In this document: positions 14,677 to 50,800 of the stretch, piece after piece
Position numbering within the stretch: the stretch's first letter is position 1
Layout of the letters: each line of letters opens with the position of its first letter
Assembly: GCF_006345805.1 (NCBI RefSeq)
Contig: NC_043014.1
Location: 14,074,001-14,138,000 of the forward strand
Source of the DNA: Octopus sinensis
Lineage: Eukaryota
DNA length: 64,000 nucleotides
Reading direction: 5' to 3'
Program-made: the position numbers and the translations under genes
Notes under the pieces: model-generated
Told to the model about the DNA's origin: nothing
The model's input: only the letters and a program-made list of their open reading frames with translations
The model's database searches: none

Positions 14677-14877
14677 CAGTGGTTTTCAACCAGGGTTCCG
14701 CCAGTACAGTCCAGGGGTTCCGCAAGAAGTTACAAAACTGCTAAAATCGGCAGTAATTTTTAATTCTCCTGTGCAGATATGTGTGCATAAGACTATTAAA
14801 TTATTGCACAGGGGTTCCTCGAGCCAGTGAAATGTTTCCTTGGGGTTCCGCTCCAGCAAAAAGTTTGAAAAGCACTG
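14677..14877. mobile_element. hAT-type MITE (201 bp)
   Basis: TIRs CAGTGGTTTTCAAC / TTTGAAAAGCACTG with a perfect 8-bp TSD ATCTATCC on both sides. Confidence 0.9.
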
Positions 14878-29939: not shown

Positions 29940-31640
29940 TCTAGATGCACAGAGTCACAAGTACAATAAATAGGTCCTGGCATAGCTCTCTCTATTTTTT
30001 CTGAAGACGTCTTGCAAAGATCATATTGCTTGTGCCTCAGTCCATGTCCAAGTTGCATTGTGACACAGACATGATAAGCCTGACAATCAACATCCAGAAA
30101 ATTGAAGTCATCTGCCAATAGCACACTTCATCTCTCTCTCTCTCTTTCTTTCTTTCTTTTTCTTTCTCCCTACTTTCTTAGTGCAATAGCAACAATTAGC
30201 CAGACCCTGCCAATTCAGATTCCCAAGCAGTGTCATTCCCAATGACTGTACACTAGACAAGAAGATTCTAAACTGCAACAAGCCTCTGTGCCTTTTGGGA
30301 GGCTCAACAGTCGAGTTTTATTTGCTTAGCAATCATCTCAGCCTCCATACCAAGAGTTCTTGTCATCATTTAACATCCATGTTCCATGCTGGTATAGGTT
30401 GGATGGTTTGACAGGATATGATGGACCCAAAGACTGGATTGTGCACCAGTGTCTGCTTTGGCATATTTTCCACAGACAGATGCCCTTTCTGGTGTCAACT
30501 ACTTTACAGCATGTACTGGGTTCTTTATTCATGCAACCCACACTACAGATGCTACCCTGCAGCTTGCAAAGGCATCCTGTATATCCATTTTTCTGTACAG
30601 ATGTGGGACATCGACCACATACAATCAGACACAATAACACTATGGAGCTCTTTAACAACCACTGATTCAAGAAGATCCTTTCAATTATCTAGCAAGATAT
30701 GATATTGAACTGTACTACCACTCCATTGGTTATGACAACAAAGGTTCCAATTGACCTGATCGATGGAACATTCTGCTTGTGAAATTAATGTGCTAGTGTC
30801 TGAGCACTCCATAGACATATATACCCTTAAAGGGTATACATGTTCTCTAAACAGGCCAAACAACATTATTATAACACAGGAAATTTCAAATAGTTAACAA
30901 CATATCCGACATCCATTTAAAGCAGTGATTCCCAAACTTTTCAGGCTGCTGCCCCCTTTAAGGGAGATCCAGCATGATACAGATTGTGACAAAGCCAGCC
31001 CTTAGATATACAGGTATAACTAATTTTTGTCGGCTGAGTGGACTGGAGTAAGGCATTTTACTTCATGTTGCTCCAGTCCCCTGAACAAGATATGATAAGC
31101 CTACAGAAATTTATCAGAATCAGCAATGAATCCAAACGATACAAGGCACCAGCTGAGATGGCATGGACATGAAGTACCTATGTGTGACTAATCTCTTCCT
31201 CACAGGATACCTTATATTTAGTTGCACCAAGGAAATGCCAGGTAGTGTGAAGCAATGAGGAGAATGAAAGAGCAGCTGTAAGACCACTCTGAAGAGAAAC
31301 AACATCAACTCTTTAAGAGTGGGAGATATTGCTACCTGCCGTTGACAATATTGAAGAGGATTGAAGATAATGAGTTGGAAAGGTTCCCCATTGACTCCCA
31401 CTTCCCTTTGCATCCTTCTGTACAGCAGAGAGATAACATGAATAAAAAATATATTGGAACCAGATGAGCCAGAATACAACCAAGTCTACCTCCTTTCTAT
31501 TTATGATGTGCTACAAGGAGAAGCAAGAAAAGAATCAAGCATGCAGGGTGGCACCTGACTCCCTTCAAATCAAACATTTACATGTCCCACCTATGACCAA
31601 AGCTGTACACAACAAAGAAACTGGGGTGCACAGTCATGAA
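29940..31640 (+). mobile_element. Fragmented old RTE (BovB-like) LINE interrupted by younger insertions
   Basis: ISLTINIQKIEVI and QLRWHGHEVPM remnants. Confidence 0.5.
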
Positions 31641-32360
31641 ATTATCCACAAATAAAAGATGCAATGGTCACCATCAGATTCAATGGACACCTATAAGTAC
31701 ATTATATCATCATCATCATCATCATCATCATCTTCATCATCATCATTTTGTGTCTGCTTTCCATGCTGGCAATGGTTAGACAGTTTGTCTGGAACTGGTA
31801 AGCTGGAGAGCTGCACCAGGTTCCAATCTTTCATGGTTTCTACAACTAAATGCCCTTCCTAATGCCATTCACTCCAAGAGTGTAATGTATGTATATAAAT
31901 ATATGTCTACAGAGTACTTCCATAGCATCAGTACCAGCATCCATTCGGTCAAGTTTAGTTATAACAGCCAAAGTAAATTGACCTTCAGGATCAACTTCAT
32001 AAATTGTAGGAAGTTAGATTTAGAGAATCCGGTAAAACTCATGGTAAGCACTCCAGCTGAGTAACGAGCTATCAGGTCACACAGTAATTAAATTACAATG
32101 TAATCTAATATGACTAAGTATCTGGAAATCCAGGATTCACAAATGGTAATATTTCCACTGTTGTGGAGAGTATATATGTAAAGAGAGAAAGGAGGAGGGG
32201 AGAGCAGTGAAATAAGTATACAAAGGGATTAGTTCCTTCCCCCCTACCTTATTTGACTATTCCCCTAATCATCCGCAGAGTTCCCTAAACAGGCCAAACA
32301 ACATTATTATAACACAGGAAATTTCAAATAGTTAACAACATATCCGACATCCATTTAAAG

Positions 32361-35300
32361 CAGTGGTTCCCAAACTTTTGCAGGCTGCTGCCCCTTTGAC
32401 ACTGAGGCAACATTCCTAGCGCCCCTGCCCAAACTAACCATCACAAACATAGACCTCTTTCTGAAGCAAATTCAAAGCAACTGTATTTCTCAAGTAAAAC
32501 CTAATGAACCCATTATTTTGCTCTTTTTACATGAATCGCCACCCTAATATCACCCCAATTTTTACATGAATTGCTACCCCATCATCGCCCCAATTGTCTT
32601 CGTATAATCATGTCCAATTTCACTAACGCCACCTTAGCGGGTATCACCTGTGTCAGGCTGTAGAACAGACTAGGCAGGTAATATTGTTGTAACATCAGAA
32701 GCTTCTGACGGGGCTTTAACGGTGTCCGGCATAGTTCATTTATGCATCGCGTTATGTCTTCATCTGATGTTTCTCTATTCTGCGTCGACCAGGGCCAAAC
32801 CCTAATCCCTAAGTATGGCACGCTTTCATCCGGCTCAACTCGTGGCAATGGGCATCCATCGAGCATCGGCGGCGATGATACATTGACAAGAAAAGATTTT
32901 CCCCAGTTCCGAATGGAGAACCACGCGCACTTGGAAACGTTAATGGAGAGCCCCATCGCTTGGTAGAACTCCAAACACCGATCTAAGAGGCACTGTAGAC
33001 CCCGGCTAGAGCCGGAGACTAGCACTAAGTCATCCGCGTATGCGAGGCCCGCCACAATCGCACCTCCGACCGGCAGACCCATATTTGCGGGCAGGATGTC
33101 CAGCAGTGGATCTGTAGCGATGTTAAAAAGGAGCGGTGATAGGGCGTCTCCTTGTCGGACACCGCGCTTTATCTCGATGGGCGTGCTACTCTCGGTCCCT
33201 ATCATGAAGGTAGTAGTACAGCCCTTGTATAGCTGTCCTACTAATCGAATCAGGTGGTAGCCGAGCCTCCTCATGCCTGCAAAAACGAGGGAATGCGAGA
33301 CAGTATCGAACGCTTTGGCTAGGTCGAAGAAGGCTATTTCTAGCCCCGGGAATTTCGGTCTAGAGTGCGTTGCCCCTCGGGCGCAGTACAGTAGCTGGCG
33401 GAGCAGAAAGGTATTCTCGGCGCATCCGTCGGCCTTGATGAAACCGCGCTGGGCGGGGTTGAGGGGCGTGGCCCTGAGCATCCTGGCGGCAAGCATCTTA
33501 GTGTATAAGTGATACACCGCGGAGCAGATCGTAAGGGGCCGCCAGTTGGACAGGTCATTCGGGCTTCCTACCTTTTTGCGAAGGAGGATCGACCTGCCAC
33601 GCAACAGAACCTTCGGAACGCATCCTGTTAGTAGTAGGCAGTTAAATATGTTGGCGAGGACCGCAGGGTCAACTGCCCTGACCTCTCGAGGTGTCAGGCC
33701 ATCGGGGCCGGCGGCGGAGGCCGGATTCATGCTTCTACGGGCGATCTTGATCTCCTCTACGGTAAATGGACGCAAAAGCGGAGCGTTGTCAACCCCCGAG
33801 GAGGCCAGATAGGCGCTTAGATCGACCTCTGGCCCCAGTCAAGAGAGCCTGTCCCGGTAGAGTGATTCAATTTCGCTCATCGGGACAGGGCATTCGCTCT
33901 CCGAATCCTCACCCAGTATTGCCGCCATAAGTTTTCTCCGGTTTCGAGCGAACAATCGCTGGAATCGCGCATAACGTACTTTCGCACGTCGTTTTGATGG
34001 TCCTGGTCCAGGCCCAGTTCCAGGGGCTCTACTCTTAGGCCTCTTACGAGCGCCCACTCGTCGCAATGCCATGTGGCCCACCCATTCCTCAATACAACTC
34101 TCGAACTCATTCCACTTCACATCCACACAATCCTCGCTGAGTGCCAAGAGGCAATCTGCAAAGGACTACGCCCAGCTGGTGTGTCCTGGTGATGCAGCTC
34201 CACTGAACGGCTCCCGCCAGTCCGAGACTTCGGGCTGTGCCGTAACCCTCGTAGCCGGTGTACTTTGTGCAGCTACAGGTACCTGTGGATTCTTCCTACG
34301 TTCACGGTGGCGAAGATCAGCACGCTTGTCGCTGATCTGTTTCGCCGTCTTATTCGGCAGCAAGGGAGCCACCGCCATGTTGATCTTTTTGCACCCAACC
34401 TCGAGCAACTCTTTCTCTTTCGCCAGGAGGACTTCGACTTCCTCCTCCGTCCAGCAACCTCACGATGCCCGGCCCGTAGCCCGTGCGAGTTGAGCGCGCT
34501 CTTCCTTCTTGCGCGCTATTTCTTCTCTGTGAAGTTCAATCCTGCACCTGTTGGCATGCACAGGATGCCGGTGCCTAAGATGCTGCGACAGTCCCGAGGG
34601 TGTTTGGAAGGACCGGCTACACCAGTCGCACTTGTGAGGCAGTTGCAGAGAGTCCAGTGCCATTGGAACAGCGTTCCCCCTGCACTTCGCTACGTGACAC
34701 CTAACTGAGTGGAGGTGGCCGCTTTCATGGCCGCAGCGACTACATCTGTAAACAGGCTTACGGTTATGCCTGTTAAGCACGTGAAGCCCCCATTCAATGG
34801 GGCTAGAGAAGTGACGAGGGCAAAGCGGGCACACTACGGAGATCGATGCACATGGAATCCCCAAGGCGAATGCCTCAGCCGATGGTTGGCAGGCCAGGTC
34901 ACCATCAATAGCCTCCTCCGCGGGCGATCCGTCCTTGGAGATGCGAGGGGGAACGGATAGGCGAAAGCTGGTGAGAGCGTCATGGTCCGCCGCGAGTTGC
35001 TCGCCATGGAGAACCAACGTGTGGAGCGCGCATTCGAGGAAAAAGCGGCTTGGTTTATCCCTAAAAACGGTAAGTGACCAGATGCCACTTTCGGCTGACA
35101 AAGTCAGGGGGTCTACTTGATCACATCAAGGAGGGCGAGACCTCGCACCCGCCTTGGGGGGAAGTAGCACTTCGCCACGGCGTGGGCGAATCCCACGTCG
35201 CAGCTGACCCTGAGGCCCTTCCCGGGACCTCGAGGCCATCAGTTTACCGGCGCCTGGCTGCCGTATGAGAATATCGTTTGGTTCTAACATCATGGGTTTT

Positions 35301-35442
35301 CGGCAGTTTTCTCCATGAGTCCGAACCGATATTCCAGACAGACACTAGTACACCCCAACCCCCAACGCACGCAGGGGCTGCCCCACCTTTGGAATTTTTC
35401 ACTGCCCTCAGAGGGCAATGCCACCCACTTTGGGAATCACTG
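32361..35442. mobile_element. hAT (Charlie-like) termini enclosing an R2-like retrotransposon fragment
   Basis: Left CAGTGGTTCCCAAAC at 32361; right CTTTGGGAATCACTG ending at 35442; flanks ATTTAAAG / GTTTAAAG (7/8 identical). Confidence 0.65.
32582..35101 (-). pseudogene. R2-like non-LTR retrotransposon ORF (CCHH-CCHC-CCHH zinc fingers, Myb domain, RT), 3'-truncated before the restriction-like endonuclease
   Basis: ORFs 34460..35101, 34166..34408, 33839..34147 and 32582..33775 share one frame, separated by three stops. Motifs: CPLCPRHF..HVLNRH, CSRC..H..C, CDWCSRSFQTPSGLSQHLRHRH, WTEEEVEVLL..INMAVA..LPNKTAKQISDKR, RYARFQRLF, SAAGPDGLT, WRPLTI, QRGF, DLAKAFDTVSH, GVRQGDALSP, YADD, YLG. Confidence 0.88.
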
Positions 35443-35554
35443 GTTTAAAGAATGCATTTACACTTCTAACAAGAGCCCCAAAAACACTTCTTAATTGTTG
35501 GAGCAAAATAGTTGAGGATCTGAAGTGTCCTCTGATTGGCAACCAAGGAACAGG

Positions 35555-35594
<40 letters not shown>

Positions 35595-35634
35595 AGTAAA
35601 TGGTGGGGTTGTGTTAACCGCACGTGGAGAAATG

Positions 35635-36087
35635 ATAGGAGAGGAAAAAATAAGGCAGAATGCTAAATTGAAAGTAAATTTTAATAAAAATGAGTGTATG
35701 AAAAATTAAAAAAGAAAAAAGAAATCTAACTGGCTTTCATTGCAAGGCAAATTTTCAAGATTTGGAAGGGGAAAAAAAAAATTTACAATGTTCTTTTCAA
35801 ATAAATAACAATACATATAAACAAAAATTAATAAATACGTATACCAATACATTGTAGTGTCTTTTTGTTTATATGTATTATTATTTTTTTGAAAAAACAT
35901 TGTAAATATCTTTTTTCCCCTTCCTCAATTTAAAAAAAATTTTTCCCCTTCCAAATCTTGAAAATTTGCCTTGAAATGAAAGCCGGTTAGATTTCTTTTT
36001 TCTTTTTTAATTTTTCATACACCCATTTTTGTTAAAATTTACTTTCAATTTAGCATTCTGCCTTATTATTATTTTTTCCTCTCCTAT
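35635..36087. repeat. AT-rich foldback (palindromic MITE-like) element just downstream of the ZNF341 stop codon
   Basis: ATAGGAGAGGAAAAAATAAGGCAGAATGCTAAATTG... mirrored by ...CAATTTAGCATTCTGCCTTA..TTTTTTCCTCTCCTAT; arms ~200 bp. Confidence 0.85.
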
Positions 36088-36348
36088 ATAAATATATGAG
36101 ATATATATATATATATATATATATATCAAGTCTACTTTGAATGTATTTCACATAAAAAAAGCATAGATACATTAACATGGTGTAGAAAGTTTCTTAACCA
36201 TTTGTTATTAAGAAAGCATGGCAGTATGATATGAAACGTTTTTCTTTTGATCCAAGTAGATAACAAGAACAAAACAGAGAGAGAGAGATACAGGGACATA
36301 GCAGAAAATAAAATCCTGAGGCATTGGTTTCCAATAGGTTGCCAATTA

Positions 36349-37427
36349 TCACATGACAGCATCTGTGTCTTTAAGCAGACTTTCGGTACCAAACTCTGCC
36401 AAGGTAGCAGAATGGGTGAACGTTTGTTGAGCATCTGTTGGCAGAGTTGCAGCTTGTATGGCAGGAGTGTCGGCCACTGCAGGTAATGCCACAGTTACTG
36501 GCTGTGCTTCAATAATGGTGATGGGTTGCAATGCCGATGTGTTAGCCGGCATCACAGAAGCTGCGGATGGGTACGCCGGGATGAGTTGGGCATGGATGGT
36601 AGTGCCATGCGAGTCTGTAGATTCTGTGAAGTGCACAACGTAATGGTCAATCACTGCATCTGTAGCTTTGGCCGACAGCTCGTTACCATTTACATTGACA
36701 TTTATGTTACCTGAACTGTCTATGGAGGTAGCAGTTGGAATGAGCTGCTGGAGAGAGGTGTCAGAAGATGGCTGGTGAACAGTAGCTGCCTGAGCTAAGA
36801 CTTGAGCCCCAGAAAGAGCAGTGGCCGTAACGGTTGTAGGATTAGTCTGTATGTCCAGTGCACCGGTCTTGTCAGAAATCCCATTCATGGCAGACGACGT
36901 GTCTAATACAATGGGTTCTGAATTCGGCAGTGTGTTGTTGTTGTTGTTGTTGTTGTTGCTGTTATTGTTGTTGGTAGTGTGATTGAATGCAACCTGCTGT
37001 ACTATGCTGTTTTCAGTAGGCCGAGTGGTCACCCCTGATGTTGCGTTGCTTCGAGGGCGTCCACGTCTCTTCGGAGCCACTCCTTTCCCACTGTTTTCCT
37101 TGTTCAATGACTCGGAGGTCACAGTGATCATGCGTTTGCGAGGTCGACCCAGTTTCCGTCGGTTACGTGGCCGGAATATTTGTGGATCTGCTCCCAACTT
37201 CACCGGATGGCATTTGTGGTCGTGGAAAAGTTTGGGCCTGAAAAACCCACGACCACATTTCTGGCACTGGAATCTGTAATCTGCTTTGTGTCCCCTTTCG
37301 TGTTCCACCAAGTGAGGACGACGACTGAACCCTTTGCCACATTCCTTACATTTAAATGGTTTCACTCCACTATGAGTAATGATGTGGGCTTTCAGCTTAT
37401 CTGGTCTGTTAAACTCTTTTGTACAAC
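36349..37427 (-). CDS. ZNF341: ZNF341 last coding exon: final C2H2 fingers, two AT-hook-like motifs, low-complexity tail, TGA stop
   Basis: Acceptor tttctttgcAG at 37428-37429; ORF 36349..37458. Confidence 0.92.
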
Positions 37428-40198
37428 CTGCAAAAGAAAATATATTGATGTGAGACATATATTGAAGTCAATGATCAAATTTATATTGAAATGACAGATC
37501 AAATACAGGCTGAAGGGAGTGATCAAATATTGACTGAAGGGAGTGATCAAATATTGATTGAAGGGAGTGATCAAATATTGACTGAAGGGAGTGATCAAAT
37601 ATTGACTGAAGGGAGTGATCAAATATTGACTGAAGGGAGTGATCAAATATTGACTGAAGGGAGTGATCAAATATTGAATGAAGAGAGTGATCAAATATTG
37701 ATTGAAGGAGCTTTGACAGAAAAAAAAAATAAAGACAAAAACAAAACAAATGACTTAATGTTTAACCAAGTTAAACAAACAATCAATTAGTTGGATATTT
37801 AACCAATTGACTAATGATAAAGAAGTGGAATTGGATCAGTGTGTGTGTTAATAATATTGGTATAATGACTCTCCTTGATGCAACAAAATGAAAAATCTTC
37901 TCACCTGTGAAACTTTTGAATGGGCATTTATGTTTCTTGACTGATTCATGAATAAGCATGTGTCTTTTCAGTTTGTCCTTCCTGTTAAAGGCTGCTGCAC
38001 AAGACTCGCATTGGAATGGCTTCTCCCCACTGTGAATGAGGGCATGCATCTTCAGATAATGTTCTGTCTTGAATCTTTTCTGACAAATGTTACAGGGAAA
38101 CTGACCTGAAAAGATTTGTAAGAAAAGGGGTTTCAACAATAACAGAAATAAATAGATATCTTTTATTCTTTTACTTGTTTCAGTTATTAGAATGTTGCCA
38201 TGTTGAGACACTACTTTGAAGGGTTTTAGTCAAGCAAATTGACACCAGGACTTATTTGGTCATGTACTACAGATGAATCAGGAGAGATGTGTGAAGAAGT
38301 GCCACTCCCAAACAGCTGAAGGAATCCGGGGTAGAGGTAGATCCAGGAAGACATGGGATGAGTGGTCAAGCATGACCTTCGAACGTTGGGCCTCACAGAG
38401 GCAATGATGAAAGACTGAAACCTCTGGAGATATACTGTGACTGTGAAAACCCAACAAATAAAGTGAGTTCATGGCTTGCAGGATGGCCTGCTATGCTTAC
38501 CTTGGATCATAGGGCAACCTGCAGTGCTTCAGGAGTCCTATTGAGTCAGGTACATCAACATCAAAATAAAAATCAATGGAAATTAAAGATGTGATACCTG
38601 TGCTGGTGGCACATAAAAAACACCATCCGAACGTGGCTGATGCCAGCGCTGCCTTGACTGGCATCCGTGCTGGTGGCACATAAAAAGCACCAACCGATCA
38701 TGGCCGTTGCCAGCCTCCTCTGGCCTGTGCCGGTGGCACGTAAAAAGCACCCACTACACACACAGAGTGGTTGGCGTTAGGAAGGGCATCCAGCTGTAGA
38801 AACACTGCCAGATCAGACTGGAGCCTGGTGCAGCCTCCTGGCTTCCCAGACCCCAGTCAAACCGTCCAACCCATGCCAGCATGGAAAGCAGACGTTACAC
38901 AATGATGATGATGATGATGATACTTATTCTATCAGTCTCTTTTGCTTAACTGCTAAGCTATGTGGACATAAACACATCAACACCAGTTGTCAAGCAGTAG
39001 TAGGAGGGAGGACAAACACAAAGATATACACAGACACTCCATATATATGTGTGTGTGTGTATTCAAAATTCAAATAAGTTATTATTAACTTTAAAAGAGT
39101 CTAAATATATAGGTGCAGGAGTGGCTGTGTGGTAAGTAGCTTGCTTACCAACCACATGGTTCTGGGTTCAGTCCCACTGCATGGTACCTTGGGTAAGTGT
39201 CTTCTACTATAACCTCGGGCCGACCAAAGCTTCATGAGTGGATTTGGTAGACGGAAACTGAAAGAAGCCTGTTGTATATATGTATGTATATATATATATA
39301 TATATGTGTATGTGTGTGTATATGTTTGTGTGTCTGTGTTTGTCCCCCCAACATTGCTTGACAACCAATGCTGGTGTGTTTATTTCCCCGTAACTTAGCG
39401 GTTCGGCAAAAGTGAGCGATAGAATAAGTACTAGGCTTACAAAGAATAAGTCCTGAGGTCGATTTGCTCGACTAAAGGCAGTGCTCCAGAATGGCCACAG
39501 TCAAATGACTGAAACAAGTAAAAGAGTATTGGCTTATTTGTCATTATTTAAACTCAGGTCAGCTCTAATCAACCAGATCTATGATCAAAAGCATTCCAGG
39601 CATGACCATCCCATCTTGTACATTTGTTTTTTCTCAATACAGTGAATCCAGGACCACATTATCTAATGTGTCCTTGGAAGATGGCAGAGTGTGATTTGAA
39701 GGAGGCTTAGCTGCTACTTCTAGCCGTTTCTCTTTGCTGATTCTGTTCGTCATTGTTATTGTCAGTGTAAACATTGCAGAAAAGAGAAATTGTAATTCAT
39801 AAATACAAATTTTACCTATACTTCCATGTGTTGGCAGGTGACGGCGAAGGTATCGTTCACAGGGGAATATTTTTTTACAATGTGGACAGGGAAATTCATG
39901 AGATGATGTGGTTAAATGGTGTTCCAGAGCTTCTGGTGTGGAATACTTGTTTAGACATTTGGTACACTGGAAATGCCTGCAGAAAGAAAAAAAGAAATGT
40001 TTATGTACATTAATATACAGTTCTGTATTTAAGAGATGAGGAATTATGCACATTGTTTACAACTGACGGATATTTGTCCTCGTCTTGTTTGTTGTTAACG
40101 TAACGTCTCAGCTGATATACCCTCCAGTCTTCATCAGGAGTCTTGGGGAAATTTCAAACCTGGGTTCTCATTCCTAAGGTATTTTTCAATGTTGTTGC

Positions 40199-47817: not shown

Positions 47818-50800
47818 TAATAATAATAATAATGTTTATTAATTGACATGAGTATTCCTTGCGATCACAATATATCAGCGAAAGAATTTAACAAGATCAG
47901 TTAATATAAAGACCTGCTAATAGAAATTGAAAAAATGTGGCATCTCAAGGCGACTACAGTACCAGTGATTGTAGGATCTCTAGGAATGATAAAAAAAGGT
48001 ACTGAAACCTATTTGAAAATGATACCAGGCTTACCATCCCTACAGGAAGTGCAAAAAATCGTATTAACTGGAACGGCTGATGTACTAAGAACAGCATTAT
48101 CGCTGTGAAAACAACATCCATTCATGAATTTGTTTATTAATTAATTTTTAAATACATATTTTACCTATGAATTTGCGTGTGTAATCTGGGAATGAGCTTC
48201 TCTGCCCTAGGTGTACGGAAAACACTCGGCGAGAAACGGAAGAAAATTTGAAGAAACAAGGAAAAAATAATAATAATAATAGGAACAAATGAAAATGTCT
48301 TAGTTGGCAAACCTTATGAGTAGACATATGCTTCTTGACATTCGACTTCTGGGCGAACGCTCGACCACAGACGATACACTGGAATGGTTTCTCACCCGTA
48401 TGAGAACGGATATGCTGCTGGAGATCAAAGTTCTTGGCAAAATACTTATTACAGAGCTCACACTGAAGTTTCTTCTTGTTCCAGTTTCCCGCACGATTAT
48501 CACTGCTCTCCGCAGCAGACATGATTGTCTCCTTCACACTGCGGAGTTTCAGTGGCTGCTGAAGGTCCACATCTTGTTGAACCGATGGCAAGATGGTGAT
48601 GATGTTGTTTGACTGTAATACCTTCCGACCTGTAAGAAAGCAAAAAGAGACTTTGTTCACAATTCTGACAACAGCCTGTCAAAGATTAACTCTATTGACC
48701 CTCACAATCATCATTTAACATGTTTTCCATGCTGGCATGGGTTGGACAGTTTGACAGGAGTTGGCAATCCAGAGGGTTGCACCAAGCTACACTGTTTCTT
48801 TTGGCATGGGTTTTACAGCTGGATACCCTTCCTAACACCAACTACTCTACAGAGTGGACTTGGTGGTTTTTATTTGGCACCATCATGAGTAAGGTCTGTT
48901 TTATCATGGTTTTCATGGCTGGATGCCCAACCCTACTCATATATAACCCTACTCCCATTTTAAAATTCTCTTAATTATATTTAAGATAAAACATGTCATC
49001 ATAATTCTAACACTAGCCTGTGTGAGATTAACTTCAATTACCTACTTATACATAAAAAAAATCTCACATTTTAAAATGTTCATATATAGGATAAAATCCT
49101 GTCATCATAATTTTCTATAAGACATGGCTGCATGTATGTATGTATGTGTGTGTGTGTGTGTGTGTATGTTTGTGTGTCTGTGTTTGTTCCCCCAACATCA
49201 CTTGTCAACTGATGCTGGTGTGTTTACATCCCTGTAACTTAGTGGTTTGGCGAAAGAGACCGATAGAATAAGTACTAGGCTTACAAAGAATAAGTCCTGG
49301 GGTCGATTTGCTCAACTAAAGGTGGTGCTCCAGCATGGCCACAGTCAAATGACTGAAACAAGTAAAAGAGTAAAAGATGATAATAATAATCCTTTCTACT
49401 ATAAGCACAGACCTGAAATTTGTGGAGAAGGGATTAGTCAATTATATCAACCCCAGTATTCAACTGGTACTTATTTTATCGACCCCAGTGAAATTTGAAC
49501 TCAGATCATGAAGACGGACAAAATGCTGCTACGCATTTTGCCCGGCATGTTAACAATTCTGCCAGCTCACCACTTTAATAATGACTATAATAATGAATTA
49601 GGGCGTCGAGCTGGCAGAAACGTTAGCACGCCGGGCGAAATGCTTAGCTGTATTTCGTCTGCCGTTACGTTCTGAGTTCAAATCTCGCCGAGGTCAACTT
49701 TGCCTGTCATCCTTTCGGGGCCGATTAAATAAGTACCAGTTACACACTGGGGTCAATATAATCAACTTAATCCCTTTGTCTGTCCTTGTTTGTGCTCTCT
49801 GTGTTTACTACCCTTGTGGGTAGTAAAGAAATAGGTATTTCGTCTGCTGTTATGTTCTGAGTTCAAATTCCGGCAAGGTCGACTTTGCCTTTCATCCTTT
49901 CAGGGTTGATAAATTAAGTACCAGTTACATACTGGGATCGATCTAATCGACTTAATCCCTTTGTCTGTCCCTGTTTGTCCCCTCTATGTTTAGCCCCTTG
50001 TGGGCAATAAAGAAATAAATATAATAATGAATATGAAAGGTGGTTGTGGTGGTGGTGGTGGTGGTTAAAGAGAATTTAGATTTTTACCTGACCGATGGAC
50101 CTGAGCTTTGTTAAGAACACCAATACTAGTTGCTGTAATAGTCACTGCATTGCCATTCTGGTGTTGTTGCACTTGCTGCAGTTGCTGCTGCTGCTGTTGT
50201 TGTTGTTGTTGTTGTTGCTGTTGTTGCTGCAGCTGGGCTTGTTGGTAGAATATTTTATCAGTGGTTTGAGTGGTCAAGGTAGTAGTGTTCATGCTTTGTT
50301 GTTGCTGTTGTTGTGACAGTTGCTGTTGTTGTTGCTGCTGTTGTTGTTGTTGTTGTTGTATTGGTTGCACTTGTTGCGTTATGGCCTGCAACTGCTGGCT
50401 GACAACAGGGTCGCTGGTGTAGACGGTGGCATTGTTGTTGTTGCCGTTGTTGTTGTTGGTGATGGCGGCGGAGGGGGTGACGTTGCTGAATATGGTGGTA
50501 ATGTTTGGTGTTGCGGAGTTTCGAGCCACAGCATTCGGAACTGACGACATCACCGGGGAGAGGAAAGAACCAGGTTGAACTGCTGCTGTTTGCTGAATAA
50601 AGGGATAAAACGAAAAGGCCATCATCATCATCATAATCATCATCATCGTGGAAATGAAATGAACTTTGACCCTTTCCATACCGACCCATCTGAGACCACC
50701 CCCACCCAGCTCACATGCTACCAACTTTCTGTTGCAAATAATCTCAATCAAAACTTCCCGTTAAAATTCCTTGGTAATTTATATTCCAAAAACCCCAGCT

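What the first reader, a model, noticed from the sequence alone, without database searches (positions are those of the whole stretch)
32361..35442. R2-like site-specific retrotransposon outside rDNA, packaged between hAT termini
Seen: one 840-codon frame (32582-35101) with only three stops and no frameshifts encodes three N-terminal zinc fingers (CCHH/CCHC/CCHH), a Myb domain and a full RT. It is cut off before the endonuclease and is visibly much more GC-rich than its surroundings. No 28S target sequence is visible at either junction. It is bracketed by CAGTGGTTCCCAAAC...CTTTGGGAATCACTG, with flanking 8-mers ATTTAAAG/GTTTAAAG. Established: three fingers plus Myb is the R2-A architecture; R2 normally inserts at one 28S site, although non-specific R2 lineages are known; hAT elements make 8-bp TSDs. 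Inference: this is either a target-relaxed R2 that landed in a hAT non-autonomous element, or a Pack-hAT that captured and carries the DNA-binding and RT portion of R2, i.e. a DNA transposon mobilising a retrotransposon module.
Basis: partly seen in the sequence, partly recalled or inferred. Interest (0 to 1): 0.8.

Follow-up and report, generated by a model that had tools for sequence, protein, structure and literature searches.

The report
Dead R2 fragment inside hAT-type MITE
A 2.75-kb broken piece of an rDNA-specific R2 retrotransposon, lacking its endonuclease and 3' end, sits inside a small hAT-type DNA transposon in an octopus-like genome, and nothing yet shows that the two ever moved together.

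Summary
Minus strand 35101-32582 is one 840-codon frame with three internal stops. It aligns collinearly with solved R2 proteins (turtle R2 E=1e-102, zebra-finch R2Tg 2e-100, Bombyx R2 4e-61). The alignment covers three zinc fingers, Myb and the RT, and ends about 370 residues before the C-terminus. The linker, CCHC, RLE endonuclease and 3'UTR are therefore missing.

GC (0.56 vs 0.40) and CpG o/e (about 1.0 vs 0.1-0.5) mark roughly 32594-35345 as foreign and fairly young. No 28S sequence flanks it. The piece lies inside a ~325-bp hAT-type MITE with imperfect ~70-nt inverted arms, CAG...CTG tips and flanking ATTTAAAG/GTTTAAAG.

Its nearest relative (41-58% aa) is a full-length R2 at the canonical 28S site in Octopus vulgaris. 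This is therefore a stray piece of a cephalopod 3-finger R2, not a contaminant.

A copy lacking its 3' end cannot be a direct product of R2's target-primed reverse transcription. I favour one-step capture as repair filler (DNA or cDNA) inside the MITE. Nested insertion followed by deletion is the main rival.

Movement as a unit (Pack-hAT) could not be tested, because no second copy was available and the source genome was out of reach. Until copies with other TSDs are found, this is an ordinary composite TE.

The parts
32353..32360 (.). Left flanking 8-mer ATTTAAAG (putative hAT target-site duplication)
   Evidence: It matches the right 8-mer at 7/8 and fits the hAT target consensus nTnnnnAn (from my own knowledge). 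Its TTTAAA core is palindromic, so the reading as a TSD is ambiguous.
32361..32429 (+). Left arm of the hAT-type MITE, with terminus CAGTGGTTCCCAAAC
   Evidence: The imperfect inverted repeat with 35371-35442 is significant beyond the first 15 nt (1 of 500 shuffles).
32430..32593 (+). MITE-internal, AT-rich, CpG-poor sequence, ending in two 35-nt tandem units (32524-32558 and 32559-32593, 83% alike) that abut the R2 piece
   Evidence: There is no protein similarity in any frame.
32594..35345 (-). R2-derived fragment: part of the 5'UTR plus the ORF up to the start of the thumb/linker. Breakpoints are uncertain by about +/-12 nt.
   Evidence: GC is 0.558, CpG o/e is about 1.0, and the alignment to R2 proteins is collinear.
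32582..35101 (-). 840-codon frame with internal stops at 34460-34462, 34166-34168 and 33839-33841
34565..34831 (-). Three N-terminal zinc fingers: CCHH 34766-34831, CCHC 34682-34744, CCHH 34565-34630
   Evidence: (aligned to ZnF1-3 of the turtle R2 chain 9nl2_A).
34313..34453 (-). Myb-like domain (WTEEEVEVLL...KTAKQISDKRADL)
32801..33553 (-). Reverse-transcriptase core (Pfam RVT_1), with YADD at 33029-33040
35150..35268 (-). Structured 5'UTR element conserved with the O. vulgaris R2
   Evidence: It forms three hairpins, and 10 pairs carry compensatory changes between the two lineages.
35346..35442 (+). Right part of the MITE. The inverted arm is 35371-35442, with terminus ...CTTTGGGAATCACTG.
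   Evidence: A related terminus occurs at 53742-53773.
35443..35450 (.). Right flanking 8-mer GTTTAAAG
30842..30958 (+). Local duplicate of the left flank plus the first ~37 nt of the MITE (copy of 32280-32397)
   Evidence: Identity is 98.8% over the 81-nt flank and 34/37 in the terminus.

Best explanation
The locus is one non-autonomous hAT-type element: a MITE of about 325 bp with ~70-nt imperfect inverted arms, inserted at a TTTAAA-containing site. Its interior carries a 2.75-kb dead piece of a cephalopod 3-zinc-finger (A-type) R2 retrotransposon.

The piece comprises part of the 5'UTR, the DNA-binding N-terminus and the RT. It has no linker, no CCHC, no RLE endonuclease and no 3'UTR. It can therefore neither cut DNA nor be recognised and primed by R2 protein.

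Inference: the piece entered the MITE in a single step as patch or filler during repair of a DNA break. The repair copied either R2 DNA from the rDNA or an R2 RNA/cDNA, and the junctions were made in a short repeated MITE motif, C(G/A)CCCCAA. It did not enter by R2's own site-specific target-primed reverse transcription.

Whether this happened at this locus, or earlier so that the composite then transposed here, is unresolved. Today it is inert cargo that could move only if a hAT transposase acts on the two ends.

Shown: the anatomy, the R2 identity, the truncation, the matched arms, and the absence of 28S. Inferred: the repair-capture route and its timing.
For: - **R2 identity and extent:**
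- **3' truncation with nothing further downstream:**. The O. vulgaris relative continues past this point into ...RMLHLP..., CCHC and RLE.
- **Nearest relative:** a full-length R2 at the canonical 28S site (...|TAGCCAAATGCCTCGTCATC) in O. vulgaris. The parent lineage is therefore probably site-specific.
- **Probable 5' truncation as well:** the O. vulgaris R2 has about 1.2 kb of 5'UTR upstream of the shared structured element. The window copy has only about 85 nt there.
- **No 28S-like target in or around the MITE:**
- **Matched arms and hAT-like ends:**. An independent MITE in the window has a related terminus (12/15) and a perfect, non-palindromic 8-bp TSD.
- **Youth of the insert:** no frameshift in 2.5 kb, three stops, CpG o/e about 1. 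A separate large deletion is therefore a less economical explanation.
- **Junction motif:** the same 8-mer lies at both inner junctions, inside a MITE-internal repeat.
- **Precedent:** maize Ds2 and Ds-like elements carry filler from genes, LTR retrotransposons and other transposons (PMC3260210). Pack-TYPE elements include hAT (PMC8903248).
- **From my own knowledge:** endonuclease-independent LINE insertions at breaks are often 3'-truncated, and R2 RT readily jumps templates and extends DNA ends.
Against: - Only one copy is available, so the parent R2 sequence is unknown. The exact breakpoints and any microhomology cannot be read.
- The 8-mer at the junctions is ambiguous. It may be MITE sequence on both sides, or R2-derived on the left.
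- A full-length R2 insertion followed by one deletion ending near the R2/MITE border would give the same picture.
- Capture of kilobase-sized filler by hAT elements is rare.
- The TSD reading is weakened by the palindromic TTTAAA core.
Confidence: 0.5

Rival explanations
1. Ordinary nesting. An R2 retrotransposed by off-target or target-relaxed TPRT into a MITE already resident here. A later deletion then removed its 3' ~1.3-1.6 kb (rest of the ORF plus the 3'UTR).
For: - Nested TEs and later deletions are the commonest source of TE fragments inside TEs.
- Non-specific R2 families exist (R2NS-1_SMed, R2NS-1_CSi; PMC5035012).
- The retained 5' portion and the matched MITE ends fit this as well.
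Against: - It needs two events.
- The remaining 2.5 kb shows no frameshifting indel.
- No 28S-like target is present.
- The nearest relative is site-specific.
- The deletion would have to end at or very near the R2/MITE border, because a MITE repeat unit can be read on both sides.
Confidence: 0.27
2. True Pack-hAT. The R2 piece was captured earlier, and the composite has since been mobilised as a unit by a hAT transposase. This is one of several copies.
For: - Intact paired ends and a flanking 8-mer repeat bracket the whole composite.
- hAT MITEs with 8-bp TSDs are present in the same window.
- hAT families, including recently active ones, are reported in O. vulgaris (PMC13282606, Table 1).
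Against: - There is no second copy in 64 kb.
- No protein above 47% identity exists among 15 billion sequences, although O. vulgaris is included.
- A TSD is equally expected if R2 arrived after the MITE.
- At 3.1 kb it is ten times the size of the plain MITE.
- No hAT transposase is in the window.
Confidence: 0.13
3. The ends are incidental or come from two different elements, or the GC-rich block is an assembly chimera or contaminant.
For: - Chance expectation for a 13/15 TIR plus 7/8 TSD somewhere in 64 kb is not negligible (about 0.3 by my estimate).
- The composition shift is abrupt.
Against: - The arms share significant inverted similarity over about 70 nt.
- They bracket the composition shift within about 100-230 nt.
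- The terminus resembles other hAT-type ends in the window.
- The R2's nearest relative is an octopus R2 and shares a UTR element with it, which argues against contamination.
Confidence: 0.06

Closest known systems
R2 retrotransposons of the 3-zinc-finger branch (lineage/clade A), e.g. R2 of Platysternon megacephalum (PDB 9nl2) and R2Tg of zebra finch (PDB 9dou)
   Same: CCHH-CCHC-CCHH fingers, Myb and RT are collinear over query residues 89-834. The top full-length relatives mostly have three fingers. Mollusc R2s lie in this branch (PMC12247875).
   Different: It lacks the last ~370 residues (linker, CCHC, RLE) and the 3'UTR. It has three stops and is not in 28S.
Canonical rDNA R2 of Octopus vulgaris (OX597831.1:79.80-79.85 Mb; locus L001)
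   Same: It is the nearest relative found: 41-58% aa and about 63% nt. It shares a structured 5'UTR element.
   Different: The O. vulgaris copies reach the RLE domain. They sit at the canonical 28S site and form a 5.3-5.4-kb tandem array. They belong to a different lineage from the window copy.
[quoted passage not shown] 2016, PMC5035012)
   Same: R2-clade elements found outside 28S.
   Different: Those are multi-copy families with complete 3' ends and copies more than 98% identical to their consensus. They belong to clades D and C. Here there is one 3'-truncated copy whose nearest relative is site-specific.
Maize Ds2 / Ds-like-4 elements with filler DNA, and Pack-TYPE (Pack-hAT) elements (PMC3260210, PMC8903248)
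   Same: hAT termini and an 8-bp TSD enclose unrelated DNA copied from elsewhere, including retrotransposon sequence.
   Different: Those are plant elements, and several of them are shown to be multi-copy or mobilised. Here the host is an animal, the cargo is an R2, only one copy is known, and mobilisation is not shown.
Endonuclease-independent LINE insertions at double-strand breaks (described for human L1; from my own knowledge)
   Same: Retroelement pieces lacking their 3' end are patched into a break without the element's normal target.
   Different: This is described for L1, not R2. Those insertions usually lack TSDs. Whether the template here was RNA or DNA is unknown.

Membership tests
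R2 (RLE-type site-specific non-LTR retrotransposon) | RT most similar to R2-clade RTs | tested here: met
   R2 proteins are the best PDB hits at 1e-102 to 4e-61, against L1 ORF2 at 1e-14. The top 150 of 1.84 billion representatives include the named R2 of Platysternon and many R2-length (about 1100-1400 aa) proteins; the full-length ones checked mostly carry three N-terminal fingers.
R2 (RLE-type site-specific non-LTR retrotransposon) | N-terminal zinc finger(s) plus Myb DNA-binding module | tested here: met
   Three fingers and Myb align to the 9nl2 chain.
R2 (RLE-type site-specific non-LTR retrotransposon) | C-terminal CCHC motif and PD-(D/E)xK restriction-like endonuclease | tested here: not met
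   Homology ends at chain residue 750 of 1121. There is no further similarity in any frame or elsewhere in the window. This copy is a fragment of an R2, not a complete member.
R2 (RLE-type site-specific non-LTR retrotransposon) | Insertion at the conserved 28S site (…TTAAGG|TAGCCAAATGCC…) | tested here: not met
   No 28S is present at either junction. The O. vulgaris relative does sit at that site.
R2 (RLE-type site-specific non-LTR retrotransposon) | 5' HDV-like self-cleaving ribozyme and 3'UTR protein-binding RNA | tested here: inconclusive
   There is no Rfam HDV-type or R2 RNA element hit. My structural descriptor gave only weak, chance-level candidates. The 3'UTR is absent by truncation. 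A different conserved 5'UTR structure is present.
hAT-superfamily non-autonomous element (MITE) | Short terminal inverted repeats with hAT-type tips (CAG…CTG) | tested here: met
   13/15 at the tips, and imperfect inverted arms of about 70 nt.
hAT-superfamily non-autonomous element (MITE) | 8-bp target-site duplication | tested here: inconclusive
   ATTTAAAG and GTTTAAAG match at 7/8, but the palindromic core also reads as an inverted repeat at 6/8. A related MITE at 14677-14877 has a perfect 8-bp TSD, ATCTATCC.
hAT-superfamily non-autonomous element (MITE) | Multiple family copies and an autonomous partner encoding a hAT transposase | not testable with these tools
   Only a 32-nt third terminus at 53742-53773 was found. 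No transposase ORF is in the window.
Pack-TYPE (Pack-hAT) element | TIRs and TSD enclosing captured foreign sequence | tested here: met
   The cargo is transposon-derived, not a host gene.
Pack-TYPE (Pack-hAT) element | Two or more copies with the same internal junctions at different loci with different TSDs (mobilised as a unit) | not testable with these tools
   No second copy is in the window. The collections held nothing close.

The most novel reading that the evidence does not exclude
The composite is a mobilisable Pack-hAT, present at several loci with different 8-bp TSDs. It would spread the DNA-binding and RT half of an rDNA-specific R2 around an octopus genome. That would be a DNA transposon giving a site-locked retrotransposon module a route out of the rDNA, and a possible source of RT/ZnF-Myb sequence for host or TE innovation.
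Probability: 0.12. Interest if true: 0.6.

Novelty: new member of a known kind. Interest (0 to 1): 0.3.

Why it matters
As it stands, this is a well-resolved example of a composite TE: a retroelement fragment used as filler in a cut-and-paste element. It is mainly useful for repeat annotation, which should not call it an active or "non-specific" R2.

It also shows that a second, divergent 3-finger R2 lineage exists or existed in octopods alongside the rDNA-resident one.

If further copies with identical inner junctions and different TSDs were found, it would be a rare animal case of hAT-mediated transduplication. It would also be the first case I know of in which R2 sequence is carried by a DNA transposon.

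The 3'-truncated, target-less structure is a candidate natural example of R2 sequence being used in break repair. That bears on how R2-based gene-insertion tools may give off-target, truncated insertions.

Tried and rejected
- **HDV-like ribozyme.** Rfam in E-value mode on 31500-36500 and at gathering score on the whole window gave nothing. Two home-made double-pseudoknot descriptors gave only GU-rich, chance-level candidates. They gave no clear candidate at the O. vulgaris R2 5' end either. I left this inconclusive.
- **Other copies or the source genome.** An exact look-up of the 397-aa ORF found nothing. Exact look-ups of five window ORFs found nothing. The word-indexed protein search gave at best 26-32% identity.
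- **Orthologous locus via the neighbouring host gene.** The last exon of the ZnF gene finds no protein above 43-67% identity over part of its length, and no octopus protein. No empty-site test was therefore possible.
- **Metagenome scans.** The R2 RT peptide patterns gave no relative. The MITE-arm pattern hit only what looks by eye like ordinary bacterial protein-coding sequence, a chance match that was not checked further.
- **"All O. vulgaris copies end at the same residue 834".** I briefly read this as a shared truncation. It was an artefact of my truncated query. Full-length R2 queries run on to residue 1165.
- **Cryptic 28S-like target in the MITE.** The alignment scores fall below the shuffle mean.
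- **Missing R2 3' half elsewhere in the window.** It is absent. The weak hit at 37210-37464 is a host C2H2 exon.
- **Homology of the ~85 nt upstream of the conserved UTR element to the O. vulgaris 5'UTR.** Not significant.
- **Exact inner breakpoints.** A split second MITE repeat unit and an intact second unit score almost equally, 24 vs 23. The breakpoints stay ambiguous by about 12 nt.
Full report

Yes. The minus strand of 32582-35101 reads as 840 codons, with internal stops only at codons 214, 312 and 421. Pfam finds RVT_1 at E=1e-26.

Against all PDB chain sequences the best matches are R2 proteins:
- 9nl2_A (R2 of the turtle Platysternon megacephalum, identified through), E=1e-102, one collinear stretch from query 89-834 to chain 12-750 of 1121;
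- R2Tg (9dou), 2e-100;
- Bombyx R2 (8gh6/8ibw), about 4e-61;
- LINE-1 ORF2, only about 1e-14.

The alignment covers three fingers (CCHH 34766-34831, CCHC 34682-34744, CCHH 34565-34630), the Myb domain (34313-34453) and the RT with YADD at 33029-33040. It stops about 370 residues before the C-terminus of a full R2. No frame downstream continues the homology. tblastn with full-length R2 proteins ends at 32591-32630 and finds no C-terminal half elsewhere in the window.

The block is compositionally foreign. GC is 0.558 against 0.40 and 0.36 in the flanks. CpG observed/expected is about 1.0 against 0.1-0.5 in the flanks.

No 28S is present. There is no LSU match even at E<5. Neither half of the canonical target is found with 3 mismatches allowed.

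**2. The ends are a matched pair of a hAT-type MITE.**

Beyond the 15-nt tips (13/15 identical), the two ends share imperfect inverted similarity over about 70 nt (32361-32429 vs 35371-35442). This remains significant when the tips are left out: 1 of 500 shuffles reaches the score.

A 201-bp MITE at 14677-14877 has a related tip (CAGTGGTTTTCAACC) and a perfect, non-palindromic 8-bp duplication, ATCTATCC. A third copy of the right-arm tip lies at 53742-53773, cut by a SINE. CAGTGG-tipped elements that make 8-bp TSDs are therefore present in this genome, which is the hAT signature. hAT families are also reported in O. vulgaris (PMC13282606).

Two cautions apply:
- The TTTAAA core of the flanking 8-mers is palindromic. 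The flanks read 7/8 as a direct repeat and 6/8 as an inverted one.
- The left flank plus the first ~37 nt of the element is duplicated 1.4 kb upstream, at 30842-30958. That copy is not an independent family member.

Between the left arm and the R2 piece lie 164 nt of AT-rich, CpG-poor sequence. It ends in two 35-nt tandem units. The plain MITE would be about 325 bp.

**3. Where does the R2 come from?**

An exhaustive HMMER search of 1.84 billion representatives gave an Octopus vulgaris protein as nearest relative (P0010 = CAI9736399.1, 47% identity). Generic 3-finger R2 proteins followed at 33-40%.

The DNA encoding P0010 (L001, OX597831.1:79.80-79.85 Mb) is a tandem array of R2 copies with a period of 5.34-5.40 kb. 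Their coding sequence runs on into the CCHC and RLE region. The array has canonical junctions:
- the 3' junction ...ATTACA|TAGCCAAATGCCTCGTCATCTAATTAG at L001 31571;
- 28S upstream sequence ...GACTCTCTT| at about 20966;
- 28S and 18S pieces detected by Rfam.

P0010 itself is a gene model stitched across these copies.

The window's R2 is only 41-58% (aa) and about 63% (nt) identical to that family, so it is a different lineage. The two nevertheless share a ~110-nt structured element in the 5'UTR, with three hairpins and 10 pairs carrying compensatory changes. The window also shares a SINE family with L001.

Together this makes contamination unlikely. It also suggests the parent was a normal, 28S-specific cephalopod R2. 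R2s of both major branches are already known from molluscs (PMC5035012, PMC12247875).

In O. vulgaris about 1.2 kb of 5'UTR lies upstream of the shared element. In the window only about 85 nt of CpG-rich sequence does, with no significant similarity. The window piece is therefore probably 5'-truncated as well.

**4. How did it get there?**

R2 integrates by target-primed reverse transcription, which starts at the 3' end of its RNA (established knowledge). Direct products keep the 3'UTR and are, if anything, 5'-truncated. This copy has the opposite polarity of loss.

The MITE contains nothing resembling the 28S target. The remaining 2.5 kb has no frameshift and still has CpG o/e of about 1, so the piece is young. 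By my rough estimate, three stops correspond to a few per cent divergence.

The same 8-mer, C(G/A)CCCCAA, lies at both inner junctions (32586-32593 and 35352-35359). It is the tail of the 35-nt MITE repeat unit. A complete unit can be read either on the left alone or split across the insert, with scores of 23 vs 24. Little or no MITE sequence therefore seems to be missing.

I read this as a one-step insertion of an already truncated R2 segment at a break inside the MITE, joined through short homology. The template could have been R2 DNA, as in the filler DNA of maize Ds2 and Ds-like elements, which includes gene, LTR-retrotransposon and transposon pieces (PMC3260210; Pack-TYPE elements, PMC8903248). 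It could also have been R2 RNA/cDNA, as in endonuclease-independent LINE insertions, which I cite from my own knowledge. I put this explanation at about 0.5.

The main rival, at about 0.27, is a nested off-target R2 insertion followed by a deletion that happens to end at the border.

**5. Was the composite ever mobile?**

This could not be tested. A TSD around the whole element is expected whether R2 arrived before or after the MITE landed here.
- No second copy of any part of the composite exists in the 64 kb, apart from the local duplicate of the left junction.
- No hAT transposase is in the window.
- No close protein exists in the collections.
- Both metagenome scans drew blanks.
- The neighbouring host gene gave no octopus orthologue through which to fetch the orthologous locus.

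The O. vulgaris repeat survey lists R2 as one family with a single near-consensus insertion of 3,272 bp (PMC13282606, Table 1). That is compatible with R2-like sequence being rare outside the rDNA, but it cannot be tied to this locus. I give the Pack-hAT reading about 0.12-0.13.

**6. The suggested ribozyme.**

Rfam and two structural descriptor searches found no HDV-like fold in 35100-35442 on the minus strand. If the piece is 5'-truncated, that is expected. What is there instead is the conserved three-hairpin element described in section 3.

**7. Context.**

The composite lies 0.9 kb downstream of the stop codon (36349-36351) of a C2H2 zinc-finger gene, and on the same strand. The best named hits for that gene are ZNF341-like. 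Its exons are at 48148-48660, 37783-38211 and 37428-36349. The composite may lie in or just beyond the gene's 3'UTR.

**8. Verdict.**

The R2-A classification and the hAT-type ends are supported. The "landed by relaxed targeting" mechanism is not supported as stated, and the "Pack-hAT" reading is untested.

This is a new example of a known kind of thing, a non-autonomous DNA transposon with retroelement-derived filler, and it is of modest interest. It becomes interesting only if further copies with the same inner junctions and different TSDs turn up.

Noticed in passing
window 30842-30958 vs 32280-32397: A 117-bp direct duplication of the left flank plus the first ~37 nt of the MITE (98.8% identity in the flank, 34/37 in the terminus). 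It brackets 1321 bp of mosaic repeats that include a SINE copy at 31705-31887. It looks like an insertion with an unusually long target duplication, or a repair-associated duplication at the transposon end.
   Followed up: partly
window 14677-14877: A 201-bp hAT-type MITE with termini CAGTGGTTTTCAACC / GTTTGAAAAGCACTG and a perfect 8-bp TSD, ATCTATCC.
   Followed up: partly
window 35150-35268 (minus); L001 22154-22275, 27545-27665, 34961-35082, 40304-40425: A structured RNA-like element in the R2 5'UTR, about 90 nt upstream of the conserved ORF start. It is shared by two R2 lineages that are otherwise about 63% identical. It has three hairpins, and 10 pairs carry compensatory changes. It matches no Rfam family and does not look HDV-like.
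   Followed up: partly
L001 (O. vulgaris OX597831.1:79799823-79846370): A tandem array of at least 5 R2 copies (period 5.34-5.40 kb, one unit 7.4 kb) with canonical 28S junctions and 18S/28S fragments. The annotated protein CAI9736399.1 (811 aa, internally repetitive) is a gene model stitched across these R2 copies. Every copy examined has an interrupted ORF (longest 508-665 aa).
   Followed up: partly
window 36349-37428, 37783-38211, 48148-48660 (minus): Exons of a host C2H2 zinc-finger gene with AT-hook-like GRPRKR motifs (best named hits are ZNF341-like). No octopus orthologue appeared in the protein collection. The R2/MITE composite lies 0.9 kb downstream of its stop, on the same strand.
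   Followed up: partly
window 5478-8120 (minus): An uninterrupted 880-codon frame of a different non-LTR retrotransposon. It has RVT_1 at E=2e-32, a weak, sub-threshold PHD-finger match after the RT, and a GDFN..H motif at its N-terminus that I recognise as the tail of an AP-endonuclease domain. It is possibly a recently active LINE.
   Followed up: no
window 35635-36087: A ~450-bp palindrome with arms about 79% complementary, flanked by (TA)n tracts at 35556-35593 and 36101-36132. It lies immediately to the right of the composite and looks like a foldback-type element.
   Followed up: no
window 53742-53773: A third copy of the right-arm terminus (CAGAGGTTCCCAAAGTGGGCAGTATTGCCAC), interrupted after 32 nt by a SINE. 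It is the only independent evidence in the window that this MITE family is repeated.
   Followed up: partly
window, many sites (e.g. 49598-49753, 54565-54718, 12918-13070) and L001 6695-6862: A ~150-bp SINE-like family with more than 15 copies in the window. It is 70-87% identical to a copy in O. vulgaris, which supports an octopod origin for the window.
   Followed up: no
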